A stretch of 64,000 nt of DNA from Ylistrum balloti (GCF_031769215.1 NW_026782756.1:186001-250000); one strand, 5' to 3'; counted from the stretch's first letter, positions 34,349-64,000 are shown. Notes: generated from the letters alone by a model not told the origin. Translations and numbers: made by a program.

Positions 34349-35280
34349 GTAAAACTAAAGATAGAGATGCACTGCCAACCTCTAGATTAGTTCTATCGCG
34401 CGTGTTAACAGAATTTCTTCTTTAACTAATTCACATAATGTTGTCAGTGAACAAAAATGTGCATGCCCGCGAAACGCAATACATGTTGAACAAGTTCATT
34501 TTTCCAGATCTCGTTTTAAAAAGTGAGACACTGATGGTTGAATGTTTCCTTAAATGCGTAAATGCACTTGTTTTTCTTGTTTACCGAATAGCATAACGAT
34601 CTGTCTGTGTAAATCGTAAGGGGAATTAAGGTACCTGTTACTTGATATTAGGAATGCAAAAGAAGATGTACAATTATGCCATATTATATTTGTCCATTTT
34701 TAGCCGAATAAACAATGAATCATTGAACCAGCTTGGATTGATCTATGTTTCAATATCTTTCAATTATGGATTAATCCTGATTTTATGTATTTGAATTCTT
34801 AAAATCCTTTGACAAGTGTTCCATTCATCTACATCCTGTATAAAAAAAATTATAATTTTCCTGATGTTTAGCCTCGATTAATCAATGTCATGCTGTGGCC
34901 TCTGCTTTGGGTTATACATCATTGTTTATCGCAAAGATTGTCTACACCATTCAGTAGACGGTATTTGGATAATATCACTCCTTCTATGTGTATGTATTTG
35001 GGGGATAGTGATTCTAGAATTTGAAGCGTTTCACTGTTTGATTTATCCTTGAGATCATACTACATTTTTGTGGTGTGTTGTTTGACTCAATAGCTTGTAT
35101 CCTTTATAAATAAAGGACTCCATGTCTTTAGAGTCTAAATATGGTCATAATAAGGCTTTATATAAAGACATGAACATTAATAGGTAACCCTGTTATTATG
35201 AACTTCATGAAATGTCTATTATGAAGTTAATATGTTTGTTGATATACATTTAGGTGGATGACTGGAAGAGTTCCAAACTA

Positions 35281-38200
35281 ATGGCAGACACTGATACCAT
35301 GGACTCCAAAGGGAGGGAGGAGTTGGACCCTACCTCCCAGAATACAAAGGAGGAAAGGAAGCAGTTTCGAATAGTCAAACCAAAAACACGCAAGCTCAAA
35401 CCTTTGTTTGAATCAGATTCACAGAGTGTGGAGGAGGGAAGGAATCGTAAAGATCAAATTCATCACAGTCGCACATCTTTGACTGCCCCAACACAAGCAA
35501 AAATATGTTACTTCTACAAAGATGATGATTACACTTTCAAGTCATTGAAAGTAGCAGTCAGTGACCGTAAATACAAGAGATTTGATTCCCTCTTTAGTGA
35601 ATTAACAAAAAGAATGCCAGGTTTAAACTATGGTGTTAGAAGCATTTTCACACCACGAGGAAAAAACAGAGTTGAAAGTTTCGATCAGTTGACGAATGAG
35701 CAAAAATACATCTGTTCAACTAAGCGACATACACTGAAAGGTTTGGATTTAGACAGACTAGATAACCGTGAAATGTGGCACTCAACTCGTCCTCCAAGTG
35801 GACGTAGGGCATATAACCGTCTGGTGAGGGACTCTCGGTTACGAGAAAGTAAAGTGAGAAAAACAGGAAAACGAGACCCTCAGATGGCATATGCTTATTA
35901 TTATTCCATGCCTAAAAAAGTTACCATTATGAGGAATGGAGACCCAACAAATCGTCATGTCATGATATTTAACAGAAAGACTGCCCAGACATTTGACCAA
36001 GTGCGAGATGACATGGGAGATGTAGTGAAATGTTCAGCCATGAGAATTTACACCATTGATGGAAAGGAGGTTTGTATTTACTAAAGAACACTTATACAAA
36101 TCGATGCATTAACATCACTGAACAGGCAACTTAATTTTGATTTCTTAAACTGTTAGTGTTGGCAGAATATCAGATTTTCATGGGTAATACCTATAAATCA
36201 AAGTCCATGTTACATTTACTCTTTCATTGTTCCATAAATAAATGTGAGATTGCTAATAAAAGAATTGTTTACATACTCTAATGGATCCTGATGATGAGAT
36301 TTGTAACAATACTACTCAATATTTGCAGCAAATGATGCCCTTTTCCTCCTGATCATTATGGTTTGATAAATTTTAACAGATACGGAATTTACAGCAATTG
36401 ATGAACGGCCCAGATGTAATGATAGTAGGAGGTAAAGAACCATTCCGTCACATGGAGGGGGTTTCATTCACACCTCGACAGTCCAGACTCGCCTTTTCTC
36501 GTGGGGGCCTCAGCACTCGAGGAGGGTCTGACATGATTGCCAGGAAAATGCAAGAACGAAGAGAGAGATTAAAGAAAACTCGTAAGTATTATTTTAGAAT
36601 TTCAAAGTAAACAAATGAGTTGTACATTTGGGAGAATCAGGTTATGTAGATAGGTTCTTGGTGGTCTGTATTCAATTGGTATTCATCAAAATCAAAATGT
36701 AATATTATATCACTTTGCAAACCTCATGTTTCCTACTTTAAAATCTTTCACCTGCTAGTTGAGATCACCCTATTTCATCCCAAAGGGGTTGTAAGATTAA
36801 ATCAGTATTTTATCACTGCATTGGTGAATGGTGGGGACCCAATGGTACTGTATCTGTGACAACAGGTGATTTAAGAGTACCCAATAGTAATTGGTTAGCA
36901 TTTGTCTCCGTGGCAACATATGATCGAGTGCTGGACATTCACCAGCATTGTGGGTCTCTCATATGTGATGGCCAGCATGAACTGTAAAGACTTTGTAGAA
37001 AGAAGAGTATAAAGAGTTTGAAAATACAATGTATTGTATAACATTTAAGATTAATGTTCTGCAAAATATTTTGCCAACCACTTCAGTGTTAAGATTGAGC
37101 ACAAGTGAGAATTCACATACTCAAGATTACTTGACTTACTCTGACAACCAGACAACTGAATACATGTAGTTTATTTGACAAACCTGTTACCCCTCTATAT
37201 GTTAACAAATAACCATAACCATACATTGCCGTTTTCAGAGGGTAAATGGAAGGTCCTAGTCCAGACCAACAAACACCCGTCTACTGGAACACCAGCTCAA
37301 GTAACGCTGACTGTGTATGGACACAAGGGAAATTCTGGACCCATTGCTCTTGGAAATGGAGATGGCACCCAATTTAAAAGTGGGAACATGGATACATTTG
37401 ATGTATGTATGGGGACTACTATTGTTGGGGAAAAGCTAAAAGATTGATTGTTTGATCAGCCTTCCTCCAAGAGGTGATGATCAGTTTTTGTATATTTGGT
37501 AATCTTTGTGGAGGGTTTAATTTCACTTTGTTTGTGATCGTTAAGGATTGCAAATATGCAACATAGATTTTACTGTTTATCAAAAAATGCTGTCCTGTTT
37601 ATAGCTGAAGAATAAATTGCTTGAAATTTGATGTTGTGAAATATCTCTAACCTTGATAACTGAAAAATATCTAACAGTACTACAGTATAAAATTGATGGT
37701 ATTGTAAAATTGTTCCTGGGATCAATTCTTCTATTATATCAATAACACCTGAAAATTTGTATGTTGGGGTTATTCATGGAAACTCTTGATTTAGTCAAAT
37801 GAGCCATTATTGATTAAATAGATTAGTCAAACAATGCTTAGTCACATTATCATATTACAAATAGACCTGGTTTCCTTATTCAATCATCTAAAAAGGAATA
37901 TAAGTGGGAGGGAGAGTTTTTTCACTTAATTTCAGTAAAGCAAATGTGTTCTGTAAACATACACATTCAGTAACATATGTAAAAATGAACTCATTCATGT
38001 ACATCATTTTTATCACAATAAGGGAAAACATCAAAAGAAAAAAATGACTGAAATTTTTTCCACAGAAAATAACAATAGGCTATTCGTACTGAGTACGTTT
38101 AGCCTAAAAACCTTTTATAGAACTGCTACATAATGAAAGAAACAATAAATGTAGGATTCAATGAACTTTCATCCTTATTTGTTTTCTGCTGAGGAAGTTT

Positions 38201-41200
38201 TGGCAAGTAGAAAACCTGGATCATATCATTATTTCATTATGATTAATGAAGGTTTTATTATCCAAGGTTGTAGTACAACAGATGCTTCAGTGATTAATAC
38301 TTTTCAATAAAATTTATATGGAAGCACAGTCTTGGGCTTAACAGTGTCTAAAATTGGCTGAAAACATAAGGAGGGTTGAAATGGAAGAAGGAAGGAAAAA
38401 AGCAATACAATTATTTTGTTGGTCATATTTACAAATGGTCAGTTAAGTTACCTTCCTGAGACTTTTAAAGAACATGAATATAGATTATTGTGCTCAATGA
38501 CTGGAAAGTTGAATTGTTTAGCAAACATGTGAAATTATTAGTCTTTTGTTTTATTAGATATTTAAAGGTCAAAGCATGCAATGACATTTACTTATATAGC
38601 TGATGAAACATAAGATTCACTTCTTTTTATTGGGAAGTTTTAGATTTATCAAATATTTTCGCATAATTTTTAACATTTGCTATTTACACACGAGCTTCCT
38701 ACATAAATTATTTTTTATCCAAATTTAACAAAAAACTCCCACAATTGTAATAGAATGTGTGATCTCATTCTATAGGTGTCTGTAGGATCATAGTAGGAAT
38801 TATAATGGTATGTGCGACTTCATTCTACAGCTGCCTGTAGGATCATAGTAGGAATTATAATGGTATGTATGACCTCATTCTACAGCTGCCTGTAGGATCA
38901 TAGTAGGAATTGTAATAGAATGTGTGACCTCATTCTACAGGTGTCTGTAGGATCATAGTAGGAATTATAATGGTATGTACGACCTCATTCTACAGCTGCC
39001 TGTAGGATCATAGTAGGAATTGTAATAGAATGTGTGACCTCATTCTACAGCTGCCTGTAGGATCATAGTAGGAATTGTAATAGAATGTGTGACCTCATTC
39101 TATAGGTGTCTGTAGGATCATAGTAAGAATTATAATGGTATGTGCGACTTCATTCTATAGGTGTCTGTAGGATCATAGTAGGAATTGTAATAGAATGTGT
39201 GACCTCATTCTATAGGTGTCTGTAGGATCATAGTAAGAATTATAATGGTATGTGCGACTTCATTCTATAGGTGTCTGTAGGATCAATAGGAGAGATATAC
39301 AAGATTCGCATTGGACATGACAACTCTGGAGACAACCCAGGATGGCTCTGCGATGAGGTTAGTTACAGATATTAAATGTAAGATTAAAAAAAAACCAATA
39401 GAGTTTCTAGAGATTTTTTATATTTTTGTAATGTATTTTCTTTTCAATCTACTGTTTTGAAACTTAGTAAATAAGAAATTCAAAATTACTAGTAAACTTT
39501 GTCTTTTCAAGTATAGATTTGAAAAAATTATTAAATGAGATATATAATACAAAAAGACTTTAGGTGTGAACTAAAAAAATGAACGTGAAAATATTTGGTT
39601 GTAATAAATCTTGTATATAATGATAAATCCTTGTTCAATGTTTGATATCAGGTAAAAATGATGGACACACACAGTGGTGAAGAGCTGAGATTTGAGTGTC
39701 ACAGGTGGATGGCTCGAGACGAGGATGACATGGAGATCTGTCGAGAAATGCCTGCTGTGCGTAAGAGGGAGCCCATACTACCAGGTGTGTGGACAAATCT
39801 GTACCATACTGTCAAAAGTGGAAAGCTGTATAGGGCAAAAAGAGAATCAGATCACAGTTCAGTTTTACAGTTCCATCGGGGCATTGGAAAGTCATAAGGT
39901 CAAAGGTGAATTTAAAGTAAAACCTCATACACTAGAGGTCATTTATTTCTCTTTGAACCTGTAAAAGTAAGAGAGAAAAAAGGTCAAATCTCATATAATA
40001 TAGGGTATTCACGTCATCTAGGCAGGAGGAAAGGAAATGAATAGAAATGAAAAATTGACCAATTGAGACAGACTTAAAATTTTTACAACTTATTTTGACT
40101 GATACTGATATTTCTATTTTCCTTTTGTAGTAATACGATACGAAGTGTATATACACACAGGAAGTCTGTGGAATGCTGGGACAGATGCAAATGTGTACAT
40201 GACCATATATGGTGATCGAGGAGATACAGGTGTAAGGCAGCTGTTTGCTGAAGCCAAGACCTCAGTGTTTCGACAAGGCCAGGTAAGTGATTTGTAGACT
40301 AATAGACCCTATTTTATACTCTATCATGTGAAACAAATTATATCCATTTCTTTTTTAACTGGAAAATGGTATTTCATGATAACATCATAGATTTATTAAA
40401 TGACCCTTTGTAGTAGATGTTTTCATACTTTAAAACTTGGTGTTGCGTTGCAGGAGGATAGGTTTACAGTGGAGGCAGTCAGCCTTGGACGTCTAAAAAG
40501 GGTCATTATTGGCCACGACGGAACAGGCTCTGGTCAGTATTTAGGACTATAAATACATACATAGTAAAGGAAATAACATTAACCAGTTTTCAAAAAAACT
40601 TTTCATAATCAAGCAAAATGAAATACTGTAAAACTTAAATTTGTCGGCATTAATTTTTAGATATATTAGTAAATTAGGGAAAGTGCTGAGGCTTATGATT
40701 TTTTGCAGAAGATTGGTTGAAGAAATTCCCCCCCCCCCTATTTTTGTTGTTGTTTTCATCAAAGGTGCACAATACTTTATGTGTGTGTATTGTACTAAAA
40801 TTGTATATGTTTGCTATTAGTAGTTTGTAATGTTTTTTGGTATTTCTTGTGTTTAGGAAATGGCTGGTTTTTGGAGAAAGTTGTGATCAGGGAACCAAAT
40901 AGCAAGGCCACAGATGACTACTCCTTCTACTGTGGAAAGTAAGTCACACTTTTATGTAAAATAGAAATAATTTATATTGATATATGAATTAAACTTACCT
41001 GTGTACTACTAAGTAAAAGACATCTGTATAGTCTACTATAGATGAAGGCTGTTTATAACTTATATGAAATTTATATAGTAGTATTGTAGTAGAAGATACA
41101 GGCAATACTGACTACATATGTTTATCTTATCAGATATTTGGGGTAATTTTATTTTCATTTGTTTTGCTGATGTAGAAAGTCAATACAGAAATATATTAAA

Positions 41201-44200
41201 CATAAAAATAAAGTGACATGTGAAATATGTCTTACATTGCATTTTACTGAATGATAGTAATTTGCAATTGGAGTATTTAAAAACAAATAATTACGTAAAG
41301 AGTGAAAAAATAAAACTACAGGAAAGGAACATTTATATAGCCAATCATTTACCGTTATAATGAATATTTTGTATTCTGGAGTTATCAGATAAAGAGTTGT
41401 GTATATATATCCACTGTCAAGAGAAAAAATGGGTCACTATTGTGTAACCCAATTGGAATTGTTCAGGCTGTACAGAACTATTCCATGATAAACAAATACA
41501 CTTGTACCGTATGTTGGAAATATAACATGTAAAGATCACAACACAGTTTCAGAATTTCTTGTCAAATGTTAAACAATAAACCAATGATAAAACTCGTGTC
41601 ATTTTAACCCCTTCTGAATATCATAACATTTTCAGACCCTATTTTATGCAGAAACCCTGAAAGCAAATAATATTCAGCTGGTTAGTTTTTAATAACAGGT
41701 ACAACTAACTCCCTCAAACTACTTTCCATATATCCCCAGATCAGCCTCTCATGGTGTTGTTCTCAGGTTCAGTCAATCAAAAAATTCAACTGCTTACACA
41801 AAGCAATCAAAGATTCCTTGACAGTGCACATAATTCTCAGCCAAAAATATCATTTTTTCTTCCTTTACTTTCACATCAATGAGGCATTATTATATGTTAG
41901 AAAAAAAAACTGCTCAAAACTGGAACTCTTCTTCAGAACTGATTCAGTAGTATCCTTCATCTTAATCATGGTGTAAATGTTATGTTTTAGATTAGGTGAT
42001 CTTCCTGTTTGTACATTCTGGCTTACGTAAAATGTTTACCTTTCTGTTATGTTTTAGGTGGTTAGATGAAGGAGAAGATGATGGGAAAATTGTGAGAGAG
42101 CTGAAAGTTCAGGAAGAATACATGGATGACATACTAGAAAAACGAAATGTGAGTGAGATCAGCGACAAAGCAGAAGATGATGATTTAAATGTTTGGTTTG
42201 AGTATAAAATTGATTTGTAATATCTAGAATGACTGAATTTCTGTCTAGTATCTTATGTTTGTGAGTGCATTACATACTTCCTTAGAGTATCATAATATAG
42301 TGTATTTTTGTGATGTTTAGCTGTTTAGTACGTCAGCTCTGATATCGTAAACCATTAAATGGGTACATGTGATCTGAATATGTATAGAAATGTAAGTTAT
42401 TATGGGTATCTAATACTTCCAAATGGTTTTTCCTTTGAAATTCTTTGTAATTATAAACTGGTTATATTTAAACTTGTTATGAAGATATTATCTGTCTGCT
42501 TTAGACACTGCTTCATGCTGCAAACACTCACTTGTGACATGGTCAAACTTTGTTGTACATAAGCCATTCACTGTGCTGAGAAGTGAAACTAATTTTTGGC
42601 TTTAATCACCTAACTCATGCTATTTTTTTAATCAATTGATGTGAAAAAAAGTAAAATTAAAAACGATGTTATCCTAAATACACCATGATGTATCTTATCT
42701 ATACAATGTATTACATTAAGGTAGAGTGTCTCAAATGTCTAGGTAATCTTCCTGGAAGAGAAATTCAAGGTATTTTTTTTTTCACTTCGGAATTCTTGCC
42801 AATGTCTACACAAGGAGTCAAACAGTCTGTATTGTGAAGAACACTCTGTACTATACCGATCCTTAACATCTTTGATGTTAACAAGGATTTGTTCACTTCA
42901 CTTTACTACAGCAGTGAATGAACACTTTGCCTGTCATCTACTTTGTATCAATATGACAAAAATAACACCAAGTACATGTTTTAAATAGAAAAATACCTTA
43001 CAAGCTCTGTATACAAAGCATTGGGACTCTCTACTTGATAATCTGTTTTGCACTTTGTAATTTGTAATAAGTTGTTTAATGTGCTGTGAACACTACAATA
43101 GCCCTAATATGGTATGTTTTGCACTGTAAGCCTTTAATTGAGCATTGTACTCTGGAGCAATGTCATTTGTGATTTTTTTAGCACTTATGTTATTGTTGCT
43201 CTGTTATTAATCCACTAAGTGTTTTATATTAATCCTTCTGCTACTAGATGTAAATCATCTTGTGTCATCACATACAAATTGTCATCTAAGATTTCCTTTA
43301 CTTTTCTCCATTTCTGTATCTTTCTGTATCTCATCTTTTTTCATCTTAACAAAGCTTCATTTGTGTTTGCATCATTATGTGCCTTTGGGTCGCTCAAAGG
43401 ACGAAGATTATAACAATACATGTGATTTAACCTCTATGTACACTTGTCTTTGTCAGCACATTCTCAAAACATACTGCACATGCACTTCTTATAGAACCTT
43501 AGATAAATGAAAACAGGACAGAGTTTTGAGAATATTGAAATGTATCACAGTGGCTGTGGTTCTGTAACAAGTGTCTAGAAATGTATTGGTAATTGTTAAA
43601 CTACCAACATTCACTGTATATATTAGGAGTTGTCAATTTCACAATCTCCTCATGTTCTGTTTTGTAAGATCCACTTTAAGACAACATGATATGCATATAT
43701 TTCAATGTTTGCTAAATTGCAGCTCCTACAATATTTTTGACATTATAGATAGCAGTCTGTAGTCTTGTGAGGTTGTAACATTGATGATAATTCCTATTAT
43801 ATCATCAAACCATGTTATATGACCAAAGTTTAACTTTGAACTTTTGTACTTAACTACTAACTTTTGAGGTTATGTTAAAAATTTTGAATTGTAATGTTTC
43901 ACATTTATTTTGATAGTGATTTTATGGTACTGATGCATATTTGTTTATGATTCAATTGTAGCTAGTTGATATATGTAGGATGAATATTTACTTTGTGAGC
44001 ATGAGATGTATGATAAGGGGAGGTAACCCTACTGGGTCTTTCAGGGTTGCTTGGGTTTTTGCATAAAAAATGGTTTAGTCAACATTTCAGCTGCATGTCA
44101 ATTTTTGGCTTTGGTTGGGACAGACATACATATGTTAATACAGGCCTTGAAAGGCTTCGTCAAGATGCCTTTCTTGTGTCAAGGGCAGGTAACTCTTTTT

Positions 44201-47200
44201 AACGCAAAGAGCAAGTGACGTGAGAGTTTGTATTGCAGTGGGAGTATGAGATGTGGAAGTTCCAGAAAGACAGCAAGGTCAAATTCTACAGTTTAGTCAC
44301 ACACAAAGCTGTCCGTATAAGACCCAACCTCACAGTTGATGCGCTAGCTGATGATCAAGACAATGATGGTAAGTTTTGGAGATGTTTCAATTACTTCTTA
44401 GGTGTAGCACTGATGTTTCACTGTAATTATTTCAGTCTTAAGATGGTTGTATGTAACAAAAGGTGAATTTTGTGTTCCAGCAGTGTTCAATGTGGTTGTG
44501 AAGAAAAAATCTATGGTGAGAGCATTCAGTAGTGCAACAAAACCCAAGAACTTCCTAGCCATCGACAATGGCAAGATCACCATGCAGGTAATAATTTGTG
44601 TTGTCTATGTATGTAGTTATTGCCACATGTAGCCAATTCTTGATACAGTGAGATTTTGTTGAAACTGTAATCGATATAAACCAACATCTAATTCTGCAAC
44701 AGGTAGGCTGTTATGTTACTCAAGGAAGGCGTTAAAATATTGTCATAGTGTTGGAGTAGGAGAAGTTATTTAGCTGTGTGTTTAGATTATCTTGGGTAGA
44801 TTTCTACTGTGTTGAAGTGACAATTTCTGAATAAAATACATTTCATTGACAGGGTATGGGAGGACCATATTGTGAATTTCGGGTACGTGTCCAAAATGAC
44901 TGGTCAGTGATGCTGGAGTCTATTAAGAATCCTCTACAATTTGTCACATTTGGTGAAGATGGTCAACCCGATGATGTGCGAGGCATTCTTGATAAGGACC
45001 CGACTCGAAGATTCTTTGTTTACACTAAGGTAGGTTATTCTAGTAATCTTCATTATATGAAACACCCTGGATAAACAAATCAGACGTGAAGATTTTGTTT
45101 ACCCTTATGTTAGTGATATACTACAAGGTATTTTTTTGTGTAACCAAATAAATAACTGTTATATTTTATTCCTTGCACACAGGGAATGTTTCGTCACCGT
45201 GGTGTGATCATGCTGTGTTCCTCCTTTACACAAGCCATCACAATCAACCATGACTACACCATGCAGGCTACTGGAAAACAAAACAAAATGGCACAGTTCA
45301 GGGTTCACAAGATCTCTACTGGAGGTGTTCGCATGTTTGAGAGCATGATGAGCCCTGGAAAGTTTATACGCATGAAAGATGGCAAAATTGATTCATTGGT
45401 GAGTTATAGATGTATAATCAGATAAACTGGAAATGCTGCTATGAAATAACTATTATATAGTTGTCACCTCCATGATTGTTAACCATGAAGGATGAGATAA
45501 ACGACCTTGAACTTCAAGGATGGGAGAAATTGAAGAAATAAATTGAACTCGAGAAATGAGAGAAATATGTATGATTAAAACATTAATGCTTAACTATTGG
45601 CCATTTAGACTCAGAATAATGAATAATCCAACTGCCATTATTTGTTGACCTTGACATTGTTAAGATGTCACTGGGAATCCCTATTGCTATTAATACATGA
45701 ACTTTGACATGGCAGGGTGAGCGAGATGAGTACTCTCACTTCATAGTTGAAAAGCATCGTGACCTGGGATACGTATCACTCCAGTCAGGTACACAGCGTG
45801 GCTTGTATCTCGGGATGAAGCCAGATGGTCGTATATGGCCCACAGTGGATACAGGTGTCAACAATATCTGGTTGTACCCTTCAGTCATTGAATGTAAGTC
45901 ACTGGTTCTCTGTGATTATGTTACTTCTGCCATATATCTGGTATTTGACTAAACAGGATTTATTCTTAACTTTAAAATGTTCAGAACAGCTATACCTCTT
46001 AATGTCTCTCTGTTATCATACTGGAGACTTGTTGTACATTTATGTAATTCTGTACATACACGTTGTATTGGGACTGTTTTGGTAATATCAATTATACTGT
46101 CTTTTGGATAAATTTTATCTAAAATTTGTTTAAGAATTTTAACAAAACGTTGTATAAAGAAGGACCTGTTCTTGATTCTCATTCCTACCTGACAGTTGGT
46201 GTCCCGAAGATACGAAGCACAGAACAGGTTGAGGAGAATGCCATGATGCAAGCCAGACAAACTGACAGTGCCATGACTGTTGACTACACGCCCACTCCTA
46301 CTCCCCGTGCAGACTTTGCAGGTATTGTAAAAACATTGCTACGTATTCAGATTCCTTTTAAATATAGCTTAAATCAAAATCTGATAAACTGGTATTACAT
46401 ATAAGATGCCTTAATCACTTAATTACATTTGAAGTTGTAGTTTTTTGTGTATGTATGGCTAATGGAAATTAGAGGTTACTCAGTCAGTAAATGACATTAG
46501 CCATATCTATTGATACTTTTTAGTACATGTATCAGAAGGAACCAAGCCTGCTGTCAAAGGTAGGTTGTCTGGAGACTGGTTGTGAATGTGGTGGCTGTAC
46601 AAGGAAACTTGGTTGGCTGAAAACTTTATAAACTTGAAGCTTGATACTATCTGCAAATGCAGGATGGTCCATATTCTCCAAGTTTCCCTGTACATGTCAT
46701 TCAACGTTGTTGCAAGTCATCATAACATCATTGTTTGCTATTTTTGTGAATGTGATTGTTTTATAAAGTTAATTGTACGTCATTTGAATTCATTGTCACT
46801 TTGTTTGTGACTAATTGCTTGAATTGAATCTAACATATGACATTTTTTTTTGTTTTGAAACTAATACATGTCTATGTTTGGTCTTCACAAAATTTCATAA
46901 TGTTTTAGTAACTGGGTAAATGGTGTGAAATATATCTAGTTTAGGAAACTGAAGACTCTCCATTACAAATGAGTTAAACTAACGTTTAGCCCTCCTATGC
47001 TGCATGGCCATTAGTCTTCAAATGATATAATATGAATTTACTTGAATGTCTACTCTGTCAGTTTGCCACAGAAAACTTGTTGTGACTTACATTTACTCAG
47101 CTAACTTTGGTTAGGTTTGGTGTTAACATTCATTTTTTTCTGAAACATGTATATGCAAGATTTCATTTACATATATATCTGAACCCTGTTACCTCTATAT

Positions 47201-50200: not shown

Positions 50201-53200
50201 GGCATGTTTATGCGTATAGATCTGAAGTCACTATGGGGAGTTGTGTTTTTAGAATATTTTCTAGTGTTGGTTGGAATATTTGGTTGATTAATAGAGAAAA
50301 CTTACACAATGAGATTCAGACATAATTCTATTTATACCGTGAAACTTGTATGTCAGACCAACCGTCTGTAAGTTACCTGTTGAAAGTTACTACCAGTCTA
50401 AAGTTACAAAGTGTCTTTATCTACTACCTGTCTTATAAATATCACCAGTCTGTATCTTTTGGTATGTCTTTATCACTTCTCTAAATCTATCAACTTTCTA
50501 TATCTATCATCATTCTAAATCACCTGTCTTTATAAATTACCTGTCTATACATACCACCTGTCACATGACTACATCTGTCATCTTTCTACACCTGTCATCT
50601 GTCTATATCTATCGTCAGTCTAAATCACCGTCTTTATAAATTACCTGTCTATATCTATCACTTGTCTATATTATATTACCTGTCTTTAACTGTCACCTGA
50701 CTACATCTATCAGTTGTCTACATCTATCACCTGTCTACATCTATCATCTGTCTTCACCTATCATCTGTCTATATCTATCACCTGTCTACATCTATCATCT
50801 GTCTACATCTATCACCTGTCTACATCTATCATCTGTCTACATCTATAACCTGTCTAAATCTTCCACCTGTCTACATCTATCATCTGTCTACATCTATCAT
50901 CTGTCTAAATCTTCCACCTGTCTACATATATTACCTATCTACATCTATTACCTGTCTATATTTATAATCTGCCTATGTCTATTGTCTGTCAACATCTATC
51001 ATCTGTCTATAACTACTGCCTGTCTGTCTCAATTCTCTGTTTATCTCCACCTCAAGTTTGTAGATACAGTGTACATTGTTATAGAAATTTTAAAAATAAC
51101 TCTATTGACTATAGATCACTTGTCGACTTATTTGTTGAGACTGATTTTACTGTCCTTAAAGGATTGATAGAGACATGTTTTACACTGTCATACCAAGCAG
51201 TAGGTCTAGAGGATTAACTGGTAACTTTGTTTACATGTACAATGATCAGTAATCTCTATTTACCAGTAATGAAGTATAAGGTGATAGTCCAGACCGGAAA
51301 TGAGATTGGTTCAGAAACAGATGCTACTGTCTACTTCAACCTGTTTGGAGATGATGGAGACATAGGAAAACGTCTCCTGCTTAATTCCAGCAATAGGCAG
51401 AGATTCCGACGTAGTCAGGTCAGTTCTCAGTTTGTCTCTTGTTGCTTCCTTAAACCCATATATTCAGTACCTTTTATTCAAATTAGATATTCAAGATCAG
51501 TGTTACAATTATCTAAACAACAAGTTCAAGATTCATAATTTAAGGAATTTTTTTCTTCTTCCTCAAAATTCAAAAGAACAAACTAGAATACATTGGAACT
51601 ATAATAAAATCTTTTGACTGATGTTATTTCAGGTTGATGTGTTTGAGCTGGAGGCAGTTTCGATTGGTCGTCCACAGCGGTGCATTGTAGGTCATGAAGA
51701 GACAGCTGATGGTAAGGGATGGTACTTAGACCAGGTTGTAGTACAGGAGGGAGATGATGCACAGGAGAAGTACATCTTTGAATGTGACAGGTATGTAACT
51801 TACCCAGACTTGTTTCTATCATGTGCAATGTAAGGTTAACCAAGGTTACCAGGAGCAACCAAGGGTCATGTAGGGCTACCCAGGGTTATACAGGGCAACC
51901 AAGACTTGTGTAGTACTACCAAGGGTTGTGTAAGGCTACCTAGGGTTATACAGGGCAACCTAGACTTGTGTAGTACTACCAAGGGTTGTGTAAGGCTACC
52001 TAGGGTTATACAGGGCAACCTAGACTTGTGTAGTACTACCAAGGGTTGTGTAGGGCTACCCAGTGTTATACAGGGCAACCTAGACTTGTGTAGTACTACC
52101 AAGGGTTGTGTAGGGCTACCCAGGGTTATACAGGGCAACCTGGACTTGTGTAGTACTACCAAGGGTTGTGTAGGGCTACCTAGGGTATTGAAGAGATACT
52201 CATTGCTGTAAGAGGTTAACTAGTATTGTTTGAGGATGCATAGGATTGTTTCAAGATATCTAGGGCAATGTAAGTAAAACCTGGGGCTCCATGGGGCCAA
52301 CTGTTGTATGGGGAACTTAGTGATGTGTGGGGCTAACTAATATTGCTTGAGGCTATTTGGATTCATTGGAATATGAAAGGTTGCCAAAGGTTGTGATGTG
52401 TGGGGCTAACTAATATTGTGTGAGGCTTTTTGGATTCATTGGGATGTGAAGGTTGCCAAGGGTTGTGTAGGTCTATCTTGGGTTATGGTGGGGGTTAATA
52501 GGGCTGTAAAGGATCCCTTTGGGATGTATTGGGCTATGTAGAGCTTAGTGATGCTCCTCATGGCTATGTGGGACTACTAGTATTGCTTAAGGTTATCTAG
52601 AGTTGTGTTATGATTACTTGGGTTGTAAAAGGTTGTCAAGGGTTGTGTAGGTCTACCTAGGCATTTGTTGGGCCAACCTTATGCTGCCAAAGGTAACCTA
52701 GGGTTGTGTCGGGCTATCTAGGGCTATATGGTGCTGCCAAGGGCAGTGAAGGCTCTCTGCTTCTATCATTATTTGTGTCAAGAAATCATGTATGTGTTGA
52801 TGAGTATTAATGTCTAATCGATTAAGAACAGTGCTAGTATTACTGTAATGTCATATTCTCTCTACTACACTGAGGATTTTCTTTTTGTTGTAGGTGGTTG
52901 GACACTGGTCAAGAAGATCGCCGTATAGAGAGGACACTTACACTCAAGGGTAGGTGATGGTGTTCAATCACGTCGTACTTACCAACTGCTCATCTAACCG
53001 TGTTTTGGGCGTGGTTTGAAAACTGGGAGCATGTGATGGGTGGGTGTATCTGAGATGTTTGCTGAGTGTGTGTCTGGGTGGTGGAAAGGAGGGGATGAGG
53101 TGGGTGGAAGGGCGTAGATAGGGTGGGGTGGTGGGATGGGGTGGGGGGTGGAGGGGTCTGCATGCTGGTCCATCTGTTAAATTGACAGAATCTACCTGAC

Positions 53201-59200: not shown

Positions 59201-62200
59201 TACATTTCCTCCAATAGACCTCAGATCTCTACCTACATTACATTTCCTCCAATAGACCTCAGATCTCTACCTACATTACATTTCCTCCAATAGACCTCAG
59301 ATCTCTCCCTACATTCGAGTTTCCTCCAATAGACCTCAGATCTCTTCCTACATTACATTTCCTCCAATACACCTCAGATCTCTTCCTACATTACATTTCC
59401 TCCAATACACCTCAGATCTCTTCCTACATTACAATATCTCCAATACACCTCAGATCACTACCTACATTACATTTCCTCCAATACACCTCAGATCTCTTCC
59501 TACATTACATTTCCTCCAATACACCTCAGATCTCTTCCTACATTACATTTTCTCCAATAGACCTCAGATCTCTTCCTACATTACAATATCTCCAATACAC
59601 CTCAGATCTCTTCCTACATTACAATATCTCCAATACACCTCAGATCACTACCTACATTACATTTCCTCCAATAGACCTCAGATCTCTCCCTACATTCGAG
59701 TTTCCTCCAATAGACCTCAGATCTCTTCCTTCATTACATTTCCTCCAATAGACCTCAGATCTCTACCTACGTTACCTTTAACTCCAATAGACCTCAGATC
59801 TCTTCCTTCATTACATTTCCTCCAATAGACCTCAGATCTCTACCTACATTACCTTTAACTCCAATAGACCTCAGATCTCTTCCTACATTACATTTCCTCC
59901 AATAGACCTCAGATCTCTACCTACATTACATTTCCTCCAATACACCTCAGATCTCTTCCTATATTGGTCCCAGAGGGATGATAAGTTGGTAGAAAGTTAT
60001 TTCCCTATTATTGTGACAATTATTGTAAAATAGATAACTTATATTTATCATATGATAAACCAATGGGGCCAACACATTACTTCTTTCTCAAAGATGAAGG
60101 ATAGGATTATTACAGAAAATTGTTAACATTTTATTACATGAACCATCTGTTATCCTTGTAATATTTTGGGTATAACTTGCCAGTGTGATAAGCATTTTTC
60201 ATTGATTGTGCCAGTCAATAATCAACTGTGATGTCATATTATGGACAATGACATTATGTCATATATATTGAAAAGGCACAAGAAAATGGCTGCCTTCATT
60301 AAATTGTAAATTTTTACTTTAAAATCTGTCAAAATTTTACTCGTCTTAGCTATATGGAAAAGATTTTTTTTTTCTTTTCATGTGAGATTTTATGATCGTG
60401 CATAAATAAAAACTTCTAAGACGCATTCAATAAAATCTCATGAAATGAAAGTTCATTTAAAATCACATGTATATTGGTTTGAAGAGCAACATGCTTGGAT
60501 AGGTCTATTGCATGGATTTTTATCACATATATATGATAAGTTATTAAGATTTTAAGCTTTTGTCTATTTGTGTACATGTCTATTTATACAGCTGTAGCAT
60601 GACATTCCTGCACTTATACTAGGTGATATAAATTTCACTTGAATATACAAAAAATACAATGGACAGTAGAATAATCATATAGCTATTATGTCTTTGATAT
60701 ATTTCAATGGTAATAAATTTATCTTTGGTGTATGTCATTGGTGAAATATTACCTTATCTGCAATATATTTCAGAGGTGAAACCTGTCGTCAGATTAGAAA
60801 GTGTAGCTGAGACAGCAGAGGAAGAGGAACTAGAACAGGAAGAAATTCACCCTGAGACTTTCCGAGGTAAAAAATTATCACCAGTTATGTCCCTTTATAA
60901 CACTTAAGTATTCTTTGGAGGAATATTGATTGTTTTATTTGAATATGTGTTGTTAACTTTGTTACATATGTTTTATCAGTAATTATGCATCAAGAATGTT
61001 TGTGTACCAGGTAATTTGCTTCTGTCTACTGTTGATATTCTGTTACAATCAGATGGAGACTGGCGGCTGTACCTTACCACAGGGTCTGATGCTGTTATGG
61101 GCACTACCAACAGTGTCTCCCTCTATGTTTATGGGACCAATGGTGTGATTGGGCCAATCTCTCTCGGTCAGGATGATGAGGAGCCTCACTTTGGTGCTGG
61201 AACAACTGATGAGTTTAAGGTACGCTCAGTTTGTAACCAATAAGATGAGTTCAGTCAACTGCTCTGTATATAAGCTTATTAAATGTTATAATTTTTAATT
61301 GGTTAATTAATGGCACATATACAAAGTACACAAAAAATGATGACACTGTAGATATACATAACATGAGCTGTGGTAGGGGAGATAATTTAAGCTCAGATAG
61401 GTGTATGTAAGTATTTGAAATAAGCGGGAATATACTTACAGGTGTTTATAGGACCTGATCTAGGAGACCTTTACAAACTGAGGATTGGCCATGATGACAA
61501 GGATAGCAAGTCAGGATGGTTCCTTCAAACGGTCAGTATCTCATGACAACTTTACAGATTCTATACATGTTTATCACTTCAATAACTTACTTGCAGATAC
61601 AACTAGGAATTCATTATGGTAATTGTATGTACTAATATTTGTCATTGTATCACATGACAGATTTAATTTCATCACATGACAGATTTAATTTCATCACATG
61701 ACAGATTTAATTTCATCACATGACAGGTTTAATTTCATCACATGAAAATATCTTTTTTATAGATGAAAATGAAGAACATCAGGACAAGTGAAGAACATGT
61801 GTTTAAGGTACATCGATGGATGTCTAGGTCACGTGATGATCGTGATGTATGTCGGGAAATCCCTGTGTCCACCAATGGCAAGCCACTATTACCAGGTGGG
61901 TACATCCCTATAGTAGTACTGTATGTGGAATAATGTGCATGGTGTGAGGGCGGCTTACTGCTTCCTCAACAGTGTGAGGCAGGGCTGGGGGTCTTCTTTT
62001 ATCTGGTGAGATTTCACAGCAGTATACTTTACTGTGTAACCATTACACTGCCAGTTTGTTAGCTTTGCATGTTTCACAGATGGATGCTTACTGATAAAGA
62101 AAATAAAACTTTGCATCGGTATTTTGTTCTTTCTGAATCATACTTAATGGACAATTTCCCTTAACTTTAAGATTTATATAAATCAATCTTTGAAATTTTG

Positions 62201-63990
62201 TGAGAGGTTAGGTATACATACAAAATATGCTCTGAATTTTGAATAGCAACCTTATCATCTCAGTGGTACAGCTCAGAAAACAGAAACAAGGCAAATTATA
62301 TTATTGTTGATTTCACAGTAAGATTTGTATAATTAACCTGTAAAACTTAAGTGATATACCTGTAAAATCTGTATTATATACCTGTAAAATCTGTATTATA
62401 TACCTGTAAAATCTGTATTATATACCTGTAAAACTTAAGTGATACCTGTAAAACCTGTGTTATATACCTGTAAAATCTGTGTTATATACCTGTAAAATCT
62501 GTGTTATATACCTGTAAAATCTGTGTTATATACCTGTAAAATCTGTGTTATATACCTGTAAAATCTGTGTTATATACCTGTAATATCTGTATTATATACC
62601 TGTAAAATCTGTGTTATATACCTGTAAAATCTGTGTTATATACCTGTAAAACCTGTGTTATATACCTGTAAAACCTGTGTTATATACCTGTAAAACCTGT
62701 GTTATATACCTGTAATATCTGTATTATATACCTGTAAAATCTGTGTTATATACCTGTAAAATCTGTGTTATATACCTGTAAAATCTGTGTTATATACCTG
62801 TAAAATCTGTGTTATATACCTGTAATATCTGTATTATATACCTGTAAAACTTAAGTGATATACCTGTAAAATCTGTGTTATATACCTGTAAAATCTGTGT
62901 TATATACCTGTAATATCTGTATTATATACCTGTAAAATCTGTATTATATACATGTAAAATCTGTGTTATATACCTGTAAAAACTGTGTTATATATAAAAC
63001 CTGTGTTATATACCTGCAAAATCTGTGTTATATACCTGTAATATCTGTATTATATACCTGTGCGTTATATACCTGTAAAATCTGTGTTATATACCTGTAA
63101 AACCTGTGTTATATACCTGTAAAACCTGTGTTATATACCTGCAAAACCTGTGTTATATACCTGTAAAATCTGTGTTATATACCTGTAAAATCTGTGTTAT
63201 ATACCTGTAAAATCTGTGTTATATACCTGTAAAATCTGTATTATATACCTGTAAAATCTGTGTTATATACCTGTAAAATCTGTGTTATATACCTGTAAAA
63301 CCTGTGTTATATACCTGTAAAACCTGTGTTATATACCTGCAAAATCTGTGTTATATACCTGTAATATCTGTATTATATACCTGTAAAATCTGCGTTATAT
63401 ACCTGTAAAATCTGTGTTATATACCTGTAAAATCTGTGTTATATACCTGTAAAACTTAAGTGTTATATACCTGTAATATCTGTATTATATACCTGTAAAA
63501 TCTGTATTATATACCTGTAAAATCTGTGTTATATACCTGTAAAACCTGTGTTATACCTGTAAAACCTGTGTTATATACCTGTAAAATCTGTGTTATATAC
63601 CTGTAAGATTTGTATAATTAACCTGTAAAACTTCAGTGATATACCTGTAAAATCTGTATTCTATACCTGTAAAATCTGTGTTATATACCTGTAAAACCTG
63701 TAAGTTTTGCACAGTTTATCAATATGGCTGTATACAATGTTATCAGCCAGTGTGTGTTATCTGTCTGTTGAATGTACCTTTTTTCTGCCTAGCCATTTAT
63801 GTGCTGTTTCACCCTGCTTTCACCTATTTCAGTGATCACATACACAGTCCAAGTATACACAGGTTCCGAACTCAACTCCAGTACCACAGCTGACGTGTTT
63901 ATATGCATGCATGGTCAGCGAGGTGACACTGGCCAACGTAAACTTGTCAAGTCAGAGACAACAGAATCAGCTGTGTTTCAACAAGGCACT
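35281..63990 (+). CDS. RP1: RP1/RP1L1-like protein: 2 DCX, at least 6 PLAT/LH2 and 2 FGF-like beta-trefoil domains; 3' end lies beyond the window; automated pipelines may call it LOXHD1-like
   Basis: 25 GT-AG exons in frame: 35254(ATG 35281 or 35299)-36069, 36380-36581, 37239-37402, 39271-39357, 39652-39784, 40131-40282, 40454-40532, 40857-40938, 42058-42148, 44239-44368, 44481-44587, 44853-45029, 45183-45398, 45716-45893, 46196-46321, 47340-47494, 47661-47880, 51267-51418, 51633-51790, 52894-52949, 60774-60866, 61053-61219, 61442-61531, 61763-61895, 63833-63990 (4095 nt from 35281). DCX1 GVRSIFTPRGKNRV and DCX2 MRNGDPTNRHVMIF...IYTIDGKE-IRNLQQL...VGGKEPF resemble RP1. PLAT motifs include YEVYIHTGSLWNAGTDANVY, IRIGHDNSG..GWLCDEV and CHRWMARDEDD. 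The start codon is uncertain. Confidence 0.85.
35500..36450 (+). other. Tandem doublecortin (DCX) domains of the RP1-like gene
   Basis: KICYFYKDDDYTFKSLKVAVSDRKYKRFDSLFSELTKRMPGLNYGVRSIFTPRG...YICST and PKKVTIMRNGD...QTFDQV...IYTIDG...GGKEPF fit the DCX consensus. Boundaries approximate. Confidence 0.85.
38746..39285 (+). repeat. 55-bp tandem repeat, 10 copies, spanning a real splice acceptor
   Basis: CATTCTAYAG ends at 38775, 38830, 38885, 38940, 38995, 39050, 39105, 39160, 39215 and 39270; the last is the functional acceptor of exon 39271-39357. Confidence 0.95.
44239..45893 (+). other. Two tandem FGF-like beta-trefoil domains in the RP1-like gene
   Basis: Two repeats of about 135 aa (exons 44239-45029 and 45183-45893). 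GYVSLQSGTQRGLYLGMKPDGRI resembles FGF2 GVVSIKGVCANRYLAMKEDGRL. Fold assignment is by pattern only. Confidence 0.65.
47905..49590. repeat. 25-bp minisatellite with an internal higher-order duplication of about 329 bp
   Basis: Unit GGCTGTATCAGACAGGTTTCCTAGT; the variant block CCCATAGGCTGCATTAGAC... occurs at 48905 and again at 49234. Confidence 0.92.
50390..51030. repeat. 17-bp minisatellite, degenerate at the edges
   Basis: Unit CTACATCTATCACCTGT. Confidence 0.85.
51860..52190. repeat. 60-bp higher-order repeat (3 x 20-bp subunits), about 5 copies, decaying to about 52740
   Basis: GACTTGTG at 51903, 51963, 52023, 52083 and 52143; subunits ACTTGTGTAGTACTACCAAG / GGTTGTGTAGGGCTACCCAG / GGTTATACAGGGCAACCTAG. 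Confidence 0.9.
58515..59965. repeat. 38-bp minisatellite, about 38 copies
   Basis: Unit CTACATTACATTTCCTCCAATAGACCTCAGATCTCTAC. Confidence 0.95.
61649..61747. repeat. 22-bp tandem repeat, 4.5 copies, ending 15 nt before the exon at 61763
   Basis: Unit ATCACATGACAGATTTAATTTC. Confidence 0.9.
62319..63700. repeat. 22-bp minisatellite, about 60 copies
   Basis: Unit TATATACCTGTAAAATCTGTGT; the leader GTAAGATTTGTATAATTAACCTGTAAAACTT occurs at 62319 and again at 63603. Confidence 0.95.
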
Positions 63991-64000
63991 GTATGTCATC

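What the first reader, a model, noticed from the sequence alone, without database searches (positions are those of the whole stretch)
35281..63990. Long ancestral-type RP1 protein: DCX-DCX + PLAT repeats + beta-trefoils in one ORF
Seen: 25 exons join in frame, linking two microtubule-binding DCX domains to at least six PLAT/LH2 domains (lipid or protein binding, as in LOXHD1) and two beta-trefoils. No giant low-complexity exon like that of canonical mammalian RP1 appears in this window. I recall that some vertebrate RP1 long isoforms carry PLAT domains, so this may be the ancestral form. Inference: a microtubule-to-membrane linker in invertebrate cilia or photoreceptors, functionally unstudied.
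Basis: partly seen in the sequence, partly recalled or inferred. Interest (0 to 1): 0.7.

Follow-up and report, generated by a model that had tools for sequence, protein, structure and literature searches.

The report
Scallop RP1-type gene: DCX, trefoils, PLATs
The window holds the first 25 exons of a real scallop gene, already in public annotation as "LOXHD1-like", that joins two microtubule-binding DCX domains to two beta-trefoils and a long PLAT array; it is the invertebrate counterpart of the vertebrate retinal-cilium genes RP1 and RP1L1.

Summary
I rebuilt the model exon by exon. Twenty-five GT-AG exons (35281-63990, + strand, 4137 nt) join in frame. They encode two DCX domains, a PLAT pair, two FGF/fascin-like beta-trefoils, three more PLATs and the first half of a sixth.

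The window is 100% identical to Ylistrum balloti contig JAUZWB010000775.1. All 25 exon peptides and junction codons equal residues 1-1379 of the public 3767-aa protein "lipoxygenase homology domain-containing protein 1-like". So the gene is already annotated, and it runs about 37 kb past the window end (22 PLATs in all).

The "ancestral RP1" reading holds:
- The same architecture is annotated across spiralians, echinoderms, hemichordates, amphioxus, tunicates and most vertebrate groups, where it is often named "oxygen-regulated protein 1".
- In a DCX tree the scallop gene sits with bivalves, below a vertebrate split into RP1 and RP1L1.
- PLAT-type, canonical and fused RP1 models intermix by species.
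- True LOXHD1 is a separate PLAT-only family.

The proposed role as a link between microtubules and membrane in cilia is inference only. No RNA run was found for this species, and no paper on the DCX+PLAT form turned up.

Verdict: a real, ordinary, already annotated gene with a modestly interesting evolutionary angle.

The parts
35281..36069 (+). Coding exon 1 (residues 1-263): start ATG and both DCX domains
   Evidence: Pfam DCX 3.7e-21 with 2 stretches. Matches doublecortin 4atu_I residues 58-248 at 2.1e-17. Exact match to P0380 1-263.
36380..36581 (+). Exon 2: linker between the DCX tandem and PLAT1
   Evidence: 46-48% identical and contiguous with Mytilus and Ostrea proteins. Exact match to P0380 264-330.
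37239..37402 (+). Exon 3: N-terminal half of PLAT1
   Evidence: Pfam PLAT 3.1e-05. Donor fixed by ortholog alignment. P0380 332-385.
39271..39357 (+). Exon 4: middle of PLAT1
   Evidence: 80% identical to Mytilus 408-437. P0380 386-414.
39652..39784 (+). Exon 5: end of PLAT1
   Evidence: Colinear tblastn. P0380 415-458.
40131..40282 (+). Exon 6: start of PLAT2
   Evidence: Pfam PLAT 1.4e-07. P0380 460-509.
40454..40532 (+). Exon 7: PLAT2
   Evidence: Colinear tblastn. P0380 510-535.
40857..40938 (+). Exon 8: PLAT2
   Evidence: Colinear tblastn. P0380 537-562.
42058..42148 (+). Exon 9: end of PLAT2
   Evidence: 86-91% identical to bivalve orthologs. P0380 564-593.
44239..44368 (+). Exon 10: start of beta-trefoil 1
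   Evidence: P0380 594-636. Pfam FGF on P0380 607-713.
44481..44587 (+). Exon 11: beta-trefoil 1
   Evidence: Acceptor 44481 fixed by P0380 residues 637-672.
44853..45029 (+). Exon 12: end of beta-trefoil 1
   Evidence: Junction read from the sequence and ortholog alignment. P0380 673-731.
45183..45398 (+). Exon 13: start of beta-trefoil 2
   Evidence: P0380 732-803. Tandem-trefoil AF2 model of the ortholog segment.
45716..45893 (+). Exon 14: end of beta-trefoil 2
   Evidence: Weak Pfam FGF hit, 0.073. 73-76% identical to bivalve orthologs. P0380 804-862.
46196..46321 (+). Exon 15: acidic linker
   Evidence: Acceptors 46160 and 46163 give stop codons. Acceptor 46196 restores the motif shared with Mytilus. 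P0380 864-904.
47340..47494 (+). Exon 16: start of PLAT3
   Evidence: Pfam PLAT 0.0082. P0380 906-956.
47661..47880 (+). Exon 17: end of PLAT3
   Evidence: Pfam PLAT 3.7e-05. P0380 957-1029.
51267..51418 (+). Exon 18: start of PLAT4
   Evidence: Pfam PLAT 0.00014. P0380 1031-1080.
51633..51790 (+). Exon 19: PLAT4
   Evidence: Pfam PLAT 0.0049. P0380 1081-1132.
52894..52949 (+). Exon 20: end of PLAT4
   Evidence: tblastn with Mytilus and Ostrea linker segments. P0380 1134-1151.
60774..60866 (+). Exon 21: acidic linker after a 7.8-kb intron
   Evidence: Splice-site scan. P0380 1153-1182.
61011..61219 (+). Exon 22: start of PLAT5
   Evidence: Pfam PLAT 9.8e-05. P0380 1184-1252.
61442..61531 (+). 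Exon 23: PLAT5
   Evidence: Pfam PLAT 0.0021. P0380 1253-1282.
61763..61895 (+). Exon 24: end of PLAT5
   Evidence: Colinear tblastn. P0380 1283-1326.
63833..63990 (+). Exon 25: first ~50 residues of PLAT6; the gene continues beyond the window
   Evidence: Pfam PLAT 0.00022. P0380 1328-1379. GT follows at 63991. The gene ends at window-equivalent 101115.

Best explanation
The finding is the 5' 37% (coding exons 1-25, codons 1-1379 of 3767) of a single protein-coding gene of the saucer scallop Ylistrum balloti. The gene is publicly annotated as 'lipoxygenase homology domain-containing protein 1-like'.

By its DCX tandem and its colinear domain order, it is the single-copy invertebrate counterpart of the vertebrate RP1/RP1L1 pair. 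It is not LOXHD1. The domain order is DCX-DCX, a PLAT pair, two FGF/fascin-like beta-trefoils, then ten more PLAT pairs. The vertebrate RP1 locus keeps this same long product beside the textbook form, which ends in a giant exon placed between the DCX and PLAT exons.

Inferred mechanism (not shown): the protein has no signal-peptide-like N-terminus on inspection, so it is probably cytosolic. The N-terminal DCX tandem would dock it on the microtubule lattice, as in doublecortin and RP1. The long chain of PLAT pairs, beta-sandwiches that bind lipids and proteins in lipoxygenases, polycystin-1 and LOXHD1, would reach to membrane or membrane-protein partners. The whole would then tether membrane along microtubules, most plausibly along ciliary or flagellar axonemes.
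For: Identity and gene structure:
- The window is 100% identical to L003, contig JAUZWB010000775.1.
- All 25 exons and junction codons equal P0380 1-1379.
- All introns are GT-AG.
- Introns 1 and 2, between the DCX exon, the linker exon and the first PLAT exon, are only 310 and 657 nt.
- One contig of an independent DNA run spans 35200-38102.

Domains:
- Pfam and PDB matches.
- 22 PLATs arranged in pairs.
- Trefoil fold.

One gene in other taxa:
- Colinear full-length proteins in scallops, mussel, oysters, gastropods, annelids, nemerteans, a brachiopod, echinoderms, hemichordates, amphioxus, tunicates and vertebrates.
- A tunicate contig carries an uninterrupted 647-aa ORF with DCX and PLAT.

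RP1 relationship:
- Careful ML tree: Mollusca 99/95, vertebrates 99/96, RP1 95/93 and RP1L1 100/99. PLAT-type, fused and canonical RP1 rows intermix by species (clade names).
- Fused models place the giant exon between the DCX and PLAT parts.

Not LOXHD1:
- PLAT-only LOXHD1 of Lingula, Owenia, amphioxus and frog scores about half as well on the window's PLAT exons as the RP1-long protein of the same taxa (or, for frog, of a related species), and is not colinear.
- LOXHD1 PLATs are one-to-one between Lingula and frog, but show no diagonal against the scallop array.

Function of relatives:
- RP1L1 and RP1 are axonemal microtubule-binding proteins proposed to tether discs (PMC7600334).
- PLAT domains bind lipids and proteins (PMC8051682).
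Against: - No transcript evidence for this species. The only run found holds the stretch as DNA.
- Whether the public model rests on RNA evidence is unknown to me.
- The DCX tree has no outgroup, so 'below the RP1/RP1L1 split' rests on the unrooted topology matching the species tree.
- The canonical RP1 giant-exon region has no counterpart here, so functional equivalence with studied RP1 is not assured.
- Binding to microtubules, lipids or proteins was not tested, nor was localisation.
- At the single-domain level the scallop PLATs are as close to LOXHD1 PLATs as to frog RP1-long PLATs, apart from PLAT1-2.
Confidence: 0.8

Rival explanations
1. Two neighbouring genes wrongly merged: a short DCX-only gene (exons 1-2) and a PLAT/trefoil gene that starts at exon 3.
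For: - Many database hits to exon 1 are short DCX-only products of 180-360 aa.
- An in-frame stop lies 12 nt beyond the exon 1 donor, so a short product is possible.
- There is no RNA evidence in this species.
Against: - The exon 2 linker is conserved and contiguous with both flanks in all full-length orthologs.
- Introns 1-2 are 310 and 657 nt, leaving little room for a terminator and a promoter.
- The same fusion is modelled in many distant taxa.
- A tunicate contig has DCX and PLAT in one uninterrupted ORF.
- Most short hits come from contigs of about 1 kb.
Confidence: 0.04
2. It is the scallop LOXHD1 ortholog that gained a DCX head. It would then work like LOXHD1, in mechanosensory bundles, rather than like RP1.
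For: - The public name is 'LOXHD1-like'.
- Single PLAT domains score about the same against LOXHD1 PLATs as against frog RP1-long PLATs.
Against: - A separate PLAT-only LOXHD1 of about 2500 aa exists from Trichoplax to frog, alongside the DCX-PLAT gene in Lingula, Owenia, Ptychodera and amphioxus; frogs carry both families too, seen here in different species.
- LOXHD1 is strictly one-to-one in its PLAT order between Lingula and frog, and the scallop array is not colinear with it.
- RP1-long proteins score 1.4-2.3 times higher than same-taxon LOXHD1 on the window's PLAT exons.
- LOXHD1 has no DCX or trefoils (Pfam column).
Confidence: 0.05
3. Same gene, different job. It would be a scaffold on cytoplasmic rather than axonemal microtubules, tethering vesicles or organelles in neurons or in spermatid structures. 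The beta-trefoils might bridge to actin.
For: - DCX-family proteins such as doublecortin act on cytoplasmic microtubules (PDB matches).
- The tandem trefoils resemble fascin, an actin bundler.
- The downstream neighbour encodes a SPATA6-domain protein, which is only context.
Against: - The closest studied relatives by DCX sequence, RP1 and RP1L1, are axonemal (PMC7600334).
- The trefoil similarity is at fold level only (10-17% identity over two domains, 29% to a designed FGF-derived trefoil), and the sequence profile points to FGF type rather than fascin.
Confidence: 0.2

Closest known systems
Vertebrate RP1 ('oxygen-regulated protein 1'), PLAT-type long products of about 2800 aa, e.g. Bufo bufo XP_040289065.1
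   Same: Same domain order: DCX-DCX, PLAT pair, two FGF-like trefoils, PLAT array. Colinear with the window exons. The DCX region lies in the same phylogenetic group.
   Different: Vertebrate products have about 17 PLATs against 22 in the scallop. Only PLAT1-2 and a few others are clearly one-to-one. The vertebrate locus also holds the giant exon of canonical RP1, which the scallop lacks.
Canonical RP1 and RP1L1 (about 1900-2800 aa in the non-human vertebrate models compared here; human RP1L1 is 2400 aa, PMC7600334; photoreceptor axoneme proteins)
   Same: An N-terminal tandem DCX of the same subfamily. They are microtubule-binding axonemal proteins proposed to tether membrane discs (PMC7600334).
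   Different: Their C-terminal giant low-complexity exon has no match anywhere in the scallop locus. They carry no PLAT or trefoil domains (Pfam column).
LOXHD1 (PLAT-only stereocilia protein; 15 PLATs as described in PMC8051682, 17-18 by my HMM)
   Same: Long arrays of closely related PLAT domains, which explains the automatic name. Its PLATs are thought to bind lipids and proteins (PMC8051682).
   Different: LOXHD1 has no DCX and no trefoils. It is a separate ancient family, present in Trichoplax, with a rigid one-to-one PLAT order. It is not colinear with the scallop array.
Fascin and FGF-type beta-trefoils
   Same: The exon 10-14 region folds as two tandem beta-trefoils. Foldseek matches fascin and HA33, and Symfoil at TM 0.83. 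The profile hits FGF1/2 and Symfoil.
   Different: 10-17% identity over the two domains, 29% to the designed FGF-derived Symfoil. No evidence of actin, heparin or sugar binding.

Membership tests
Doublecortin (DCX) superfamily | One or two DCX domains scoring above the Pfam threshold | tested here: met
   PF03607 at 75.4 bits against a cut-off of 22, two stretches. Aligns over both domains of doublecortin 4atu_I.
RP1/RP1L1 subfamily | The DCX tandem groups with RP1 and RP1L1 rather than with other DCX proteins | tested here: met
   The best 150 of 592 phmmer hits are RP1, RP1L1 or DCX-PLAT proteins where named. The tree follows the species tree, with RP1 and RP1L1 as vertebrate sisters. Caveat: no DCX, DCLK or DCDC2 outgroup was included.
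RP1/RP1L1 subfamily | A giant C-terminal low-complexity exon with the 'RP1 domain' of the canonical proteins | tested here: not met
   Canonical RP1 and RP1L1 proteins match only the DCX exon, in the window and in the 85.8-kb locus.
RP1/RP1L1 subfamily | Colinear with the PLAT-type products annotated at vertebrate RP1 loci | tested here: met
   Bufo, Chelonia, Macrotis and Pyxicephalus proteins map colinearly on the window exons. Domain content matches.
RP1/RP1L1 subfamily | Localisation on the photoreceptor or ciliary axoneme | not testable with these tools
   No RNA run or protein data for this species.
LOXHD1 | A protein made only of PLAT repeats | tested here: not met
   DCX x2 and FGF-like trefoils are present. 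True LOXHD1 entries list PLAT-type Pfam families only.
LOXHD1 | One-to-one order of PLAT repeats shared by LOXHD1 orthologs | tested here: not met
   Lingula against frog LOXHD1 gives a clean diagonal with mean best score 354. Scallop against LOXHD1 gives no diagonal, mean 208.
PLAT/LH2 domain proteins | PLAT beta-sandwich domains scoring above the Pfam threshold | tested here: met
   PF01477 at 1064 bits with 21 stretches on P0380. Exon-level hits. PDB matches to polycystin-1 and lipoxygenase PLATs for the ortholog.
Beta-trefoil (FGF/fascin type) | A twelve-stranded trefoil fold, here two in tandem | tested here: met
   The test used the Mytilus segment P0255:612-885, which aligns contiguously with window exons 10-14. 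AF2 pLDDT 93.8. Foldseek hits fascin, HA33 and Symfoil. The profile hits Symfoil and FGF. Pfam FGF on the scallop's own protein.
DCDC2C (DCX plus ricin-type trefoil; FLJ46154 in PMC1550402) | DCX combined with a ricin-type trefoil, with the DCX repeats in reversed order | not tested
   Considered because. The top phmmer hits were all RP1-type.

The most novel reading that the evidence does not exclude
The textbook RP1, which ends in a giant exon, would be a vertebrate add-on. On this reading the ancestral product of the locus is a 2800-3800-aa protein with DCX, trefoil and PLAT domains. It is still conserved from scallops to marsupials, and PLAT and trefoil exons are still readable downstream of the giant exon in at least two placental mammals. 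This long form would be the working protein in cilia outside photoreceptors, and it is unstudied, so variants in its exons would be missed by current RP1 testing.
Probability: 0.45. Interest if true: 0.6.

Novelty: already known. Interest (0 to 1): 0.3.

Why it matters
For this window, little: the exact gene model is already public, and dozens of orthologs with the same architecture are annotated.

The useful by-products are two.
- The automatic name 'LOXHD1-like' is misleading. By DCX phylogeny and domain order the gene belongs with RP1/RP1L1, and a separate true LOXHD1 family exists.
- The comparison shows that the RP1 locus of most vertebrates keeps a long PLAT-bearing product. I could find no paper on it. 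If that product is expressed in cilia, it offers a concrete membrane-binding part for a protein family whose link from axoneme to membrane is still unexplained.

Tried and rejected
- The RNA evidence search found only one run, X1. It holds introns too and differs by about 0.3-0.5%, so it is DNA and gives no transcript information.
- My first splice choices were wrong at four places, and orthologs corrected them:
  - Exon 3 donor: 37423 changed to 37402.
  - Exon 12 donor: 45042 changed to 45029.
  - Exon 15 acceptor: 46160 and 46163 both give stop codons; changed to 46196.
  - Exon 11 acceptor: 44484 changed to 44481.
- P0264, 'LOXH1 protein [Polypterus]', was tried as a LOXHD1 anchor. It proved to be another fused RP1 model.
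- Microsynteny test: the flanks of Scleropages RP1L1 (L002) show no called upstream gene and no tblastn match to the window's upstream minus-strand exons. Only a Src-type kinase lies downstream. The C8orf74 claim stays untested apart from a weak Pfam CLAMP hit.
- P0253 (Ostrea) is not on record for a locus look-up.
- Six literature searches for DCX+PLAT, RP1+PLAT or RP1+LOXHD1 gave nothing relevant. The mollusc LOXHD1 search was unproductive.
- The greedy exon-to-Physella mapping went out of register after exon 15 because of the repeats, and I ignored it.

Full report
**What is there.**
The window is AT-rich animal DNA without N runs. On the + strand from 35254 on, stop-free frames carry recognisable domain pieces. 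The 276-codon frame 35254-36081 holds two DCX domains (Pfam 3.7e-21). It aligns over both domains of microtubule-bound doublecortin (4atu_I, 2.1e-17). Nine further frames give PLAT halves.

**Exon model.**
I searched exon by exon, by reference, and never handed a joined translation to a search tool. Candidate splice sites were listed around each tblastn core and chained by phase. Four first choices were wrong and were corrected with the Mytilus and Ostrea proteins.

The result is 25 exons from the ATG at 35281 to the donor at 63990. All introns are GT-AG. The exons total 4137 nt, or 1379 codons, and introns range from 112 to 7824 nt.

**Identity of the locus.**
The last protein search brought in scallop orthologs. 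One of them, P0380 ('lipoxygenase homology domain-containing protein 1-like [Ylistrum balloti]', 3767 aa), matched exon 1 at 100%. Its locus L003 lies on assembly GCA_031769215.1, contig JAUZWB010000775.1. L003 is 100% identical to window 25281-64000 over 38,720 bases.

All 25 exon peptides and all split codons equal P0380 residues 1-1379. The finding is therefore the first 37% of an already annotated gene. That gene spans 65.8 kb and ends about 37 kb beyond the window.

P0380 has DCX x2, an FGF-like region and 21 Pfam PLAT stretches. My own PLAT HMM finds 22 PLATs arranged as 11 pairs. The window holds PLAT1-5 and the first ~50 residues of PLAT6.

**Beta-trefoils.**
Window exons 10-14 equal P0380 594-862. 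I aligned the matching segment of 46 orthologs (A1).
- As a profile, the alignment hits Symfoil designs and FGF1/2 in the PDB (6.5e-17 to 1e-6).
- AlphaFold2 on the Mytilus segment gives pLDDT 93.8 and pTM 0.88, with an all-beta pattern in two halves.
- Foldseek returns tandem-trefoil proteins, fascin and HA33. Over a single domain it returns Symfoil-1 with TM 0.83 and rmsd 2.2.

Two trefoils are confirmed. The exon 12/13 boundary falls between them.

**One gene or two.**
There is no RNA for this species. The only run found carries the introns and is DNA. One of its contigs spans 35200-38102, so the DCX exon, the linker exon and the first PLAT exon are physically contiguous in a second data set.

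Indirect support for one gene is strong:
- Introns 1 and 2 are 310 and 657 nt.
- The linker exon 2 is conserved and contiguous on both sides in the orthologs.
- Full-length DCX-trefoil-PLAT proteins are annotated in scallops, mussel, oysters, pearl oyster, clams, gastropods, annelids, nemerteans, a brachiopod, echinoderms, hemichordates, amphioxus, tunicates, lamprey, sharks, sturgeon, bowfin, coelacanth, lungfish, amphibians, turtles, crocodilians, birds, squamates and marsupials.
- A 2043-nt contig from run SRR3402057 is 73.5% identical to Styela. It has DCX and PLAT in one uninterrupted 647-codon ORF, as a spliced transcript would.

**Relation to RP1.**
Exon 1 found 592 relatives by phmmer. 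Where named, the best 150 are RP1, RP1L1 or DCX-PLAT proteins. A careful ML tree of the DCX tandem (50 rows) follows the species tree:
- The window groups with an unnamed relative (P0001) inside bivalves.
- Mollusca has support 99/95 and spiralians 99/99.
- Echinoderms, amphioxus and tunicates branch in turn.
- Vertebrates (99/96) split into RP1L1 (100/99) and RP1 (95/93).

Inside the RP1 clade, PLAT-type, canonical and fused models intermix by species. The larger quick tree agrees.

Several gene models carry all three parts in order: DCX, then the canonical giant-exon region, then the PLAT-type region starting at its residue ~272. These come from penguin, tinamou, ostrich, coelacanth, catshark, bowfin, Polypterus, mole-rat and goat. 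So the giant exon lies between the DCX and PLAT exons of one locus, at the position of the scallop's intron 2.

The scallop has no such exon. Canonical RP1 and RP1L1 match only the DCX exon in the whole 85.8-kb locus.

**Relation to LOXHD1.**
A separate PLAT-only family of about 2500 aa, annotated LOXHD1, exists from Trichoplax to frog. It is annotated beside the DCX-PLAT gene in Lingula, Owenia, Ptychodera and amphioxus.

On the window's PLAT exons, RP1-long proteins score higher than LOXHD1 of the same taxa, and only the former are colinear:

| Taxon | RP1-long (bits) | LOXHD1 (bits) |
|---|---|---|
| Lingula | 740 | 395 |
| Owenia | 764 | 337 |
| Amphioxus | 747 | 497 and 458 |
| Frog | 569 | 414 |

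Domain-by-domain comparison gives four results:
- LOXHD1 of Lingula and frog pair one-to-one, with mean best score 354.
- Scallop and mussel RP1-long pair one-to-one for PLAT1-16. The scallop has four extra PLATs.
- Scallop and frog RP1-long keep the odd/even pair pattern in all 22 rows, but clear one-to-one matches are limited to a few domains (PLAT1-2 and 6-8).
- Scallop against LOXHD1 shows no diagonal.

The public name is therefore a PLAT-similarity label, not orthology.

**How it probably works.**
Shown: the domains and their order. The N-terminus is hydrophilic on inspection, with nothing like a signal peptide; this was not tested with a predictor.

Inferred: the DCX tandem docks on microtubules. 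RP1L1 and RP1 are axonemal microtubule-binding proteins proposed to tether discs through unknown partners (PMC7600334). PLAT domains bind lipids and proteins (PMC8051682; PDB matches to polycystin-1 and lipoxygenase PLATs). A microtubule-anchored chain of 11 PLAT pairs would suit tethering membrane or membrane complexes along an axoneme. No expression, localisation or binding evidence was obtainable.

**Literature.**
Six searches for DCX+PLAT, RP1+PLAT or RP1+LOXHD1 gave nothing relevant. The 2006 DCX-superfamily survey mentions a ricin domain in one member but no PLAT.

**Verdict.**
The gene and its family are already in public annotation. Interest is low to moderate.

Noticed in passing
window 38743-39285: A 55-bp minisatellite of 9.9 copies (89% matches) whose unit copies the acceptor of exon 4 and the exon's first ~15 bases. 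In the copies a TAG stop follows, so each copy is a decoy acceptor upstream of the real one at 39271.
   Followed up: partly
window 47911-49593, 50558-51009, 51858-52186, 58500-59965, 62336-63701: Five large intronic minisatellites, with periods of 25, 17/34/51, 60, 38 and 22 bp and up to 67 copies. Together they cover about 5.3 kb of the 28.7-kb stretch. Several start or end within ~130 bases of an exon, and they create the long repeat-derived ORFs seen in the ORF list.
   Followed up: partly
window 37916-38109: Word depth in run X1 jumps from about 11 to about 2465 here, and contigs break with many different loose ends. This points to a very high-copy short repeat in intron 3.
   Followed up: no
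window 40071: Run X1 carries a 30-base insertion relative to the window in intron 5, plus 26 single-base differences over 5.8 kb. It is probably another haplotype or individual.
   Followed up: no
window 26274-34046, minus strand: A head-to-head upstream gene, annotated as a 310-aa product with only a weak Pfam CLAMP hit (flagellar C1a-32 family; 0.0016 on exon 31859-32299). Beyond the window, the downstream neighbour of the RP1-type gene encodes a SPATA6-domain protein.
   Followed up: partly
window 2596-6926 (+), 16089-16304 (-), 20010-24043 (+): Exons of three ordinary genes: an ELO-family fatty-acid elongase (Pfam ELO 1.9e-14), NDUFB7 (8.4e-22) and EIF3I (1.9e-33).
   Followed up: partly
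P0380 residues 334-3651 (window exons 3-25 and beyond): The 22 PLATs come as 11 pairs with about 16-residue spacers. In comparisons with frog RP1-long, odd domains always match odd and even always match even. The evolving unit is therefore a PLAT pair. The scallop has four PLATs more than the mussel.
   Followed up: partly
L001 (run SRR3402057 contig, 2043 nt): A tunicate contig with an uninterrupted ORF covering DCX x2, PLAT x2 and the start of the trefoil. It ends in a stop at codon 648, which could be a short isoform or a retained intron.
   Followed up: no
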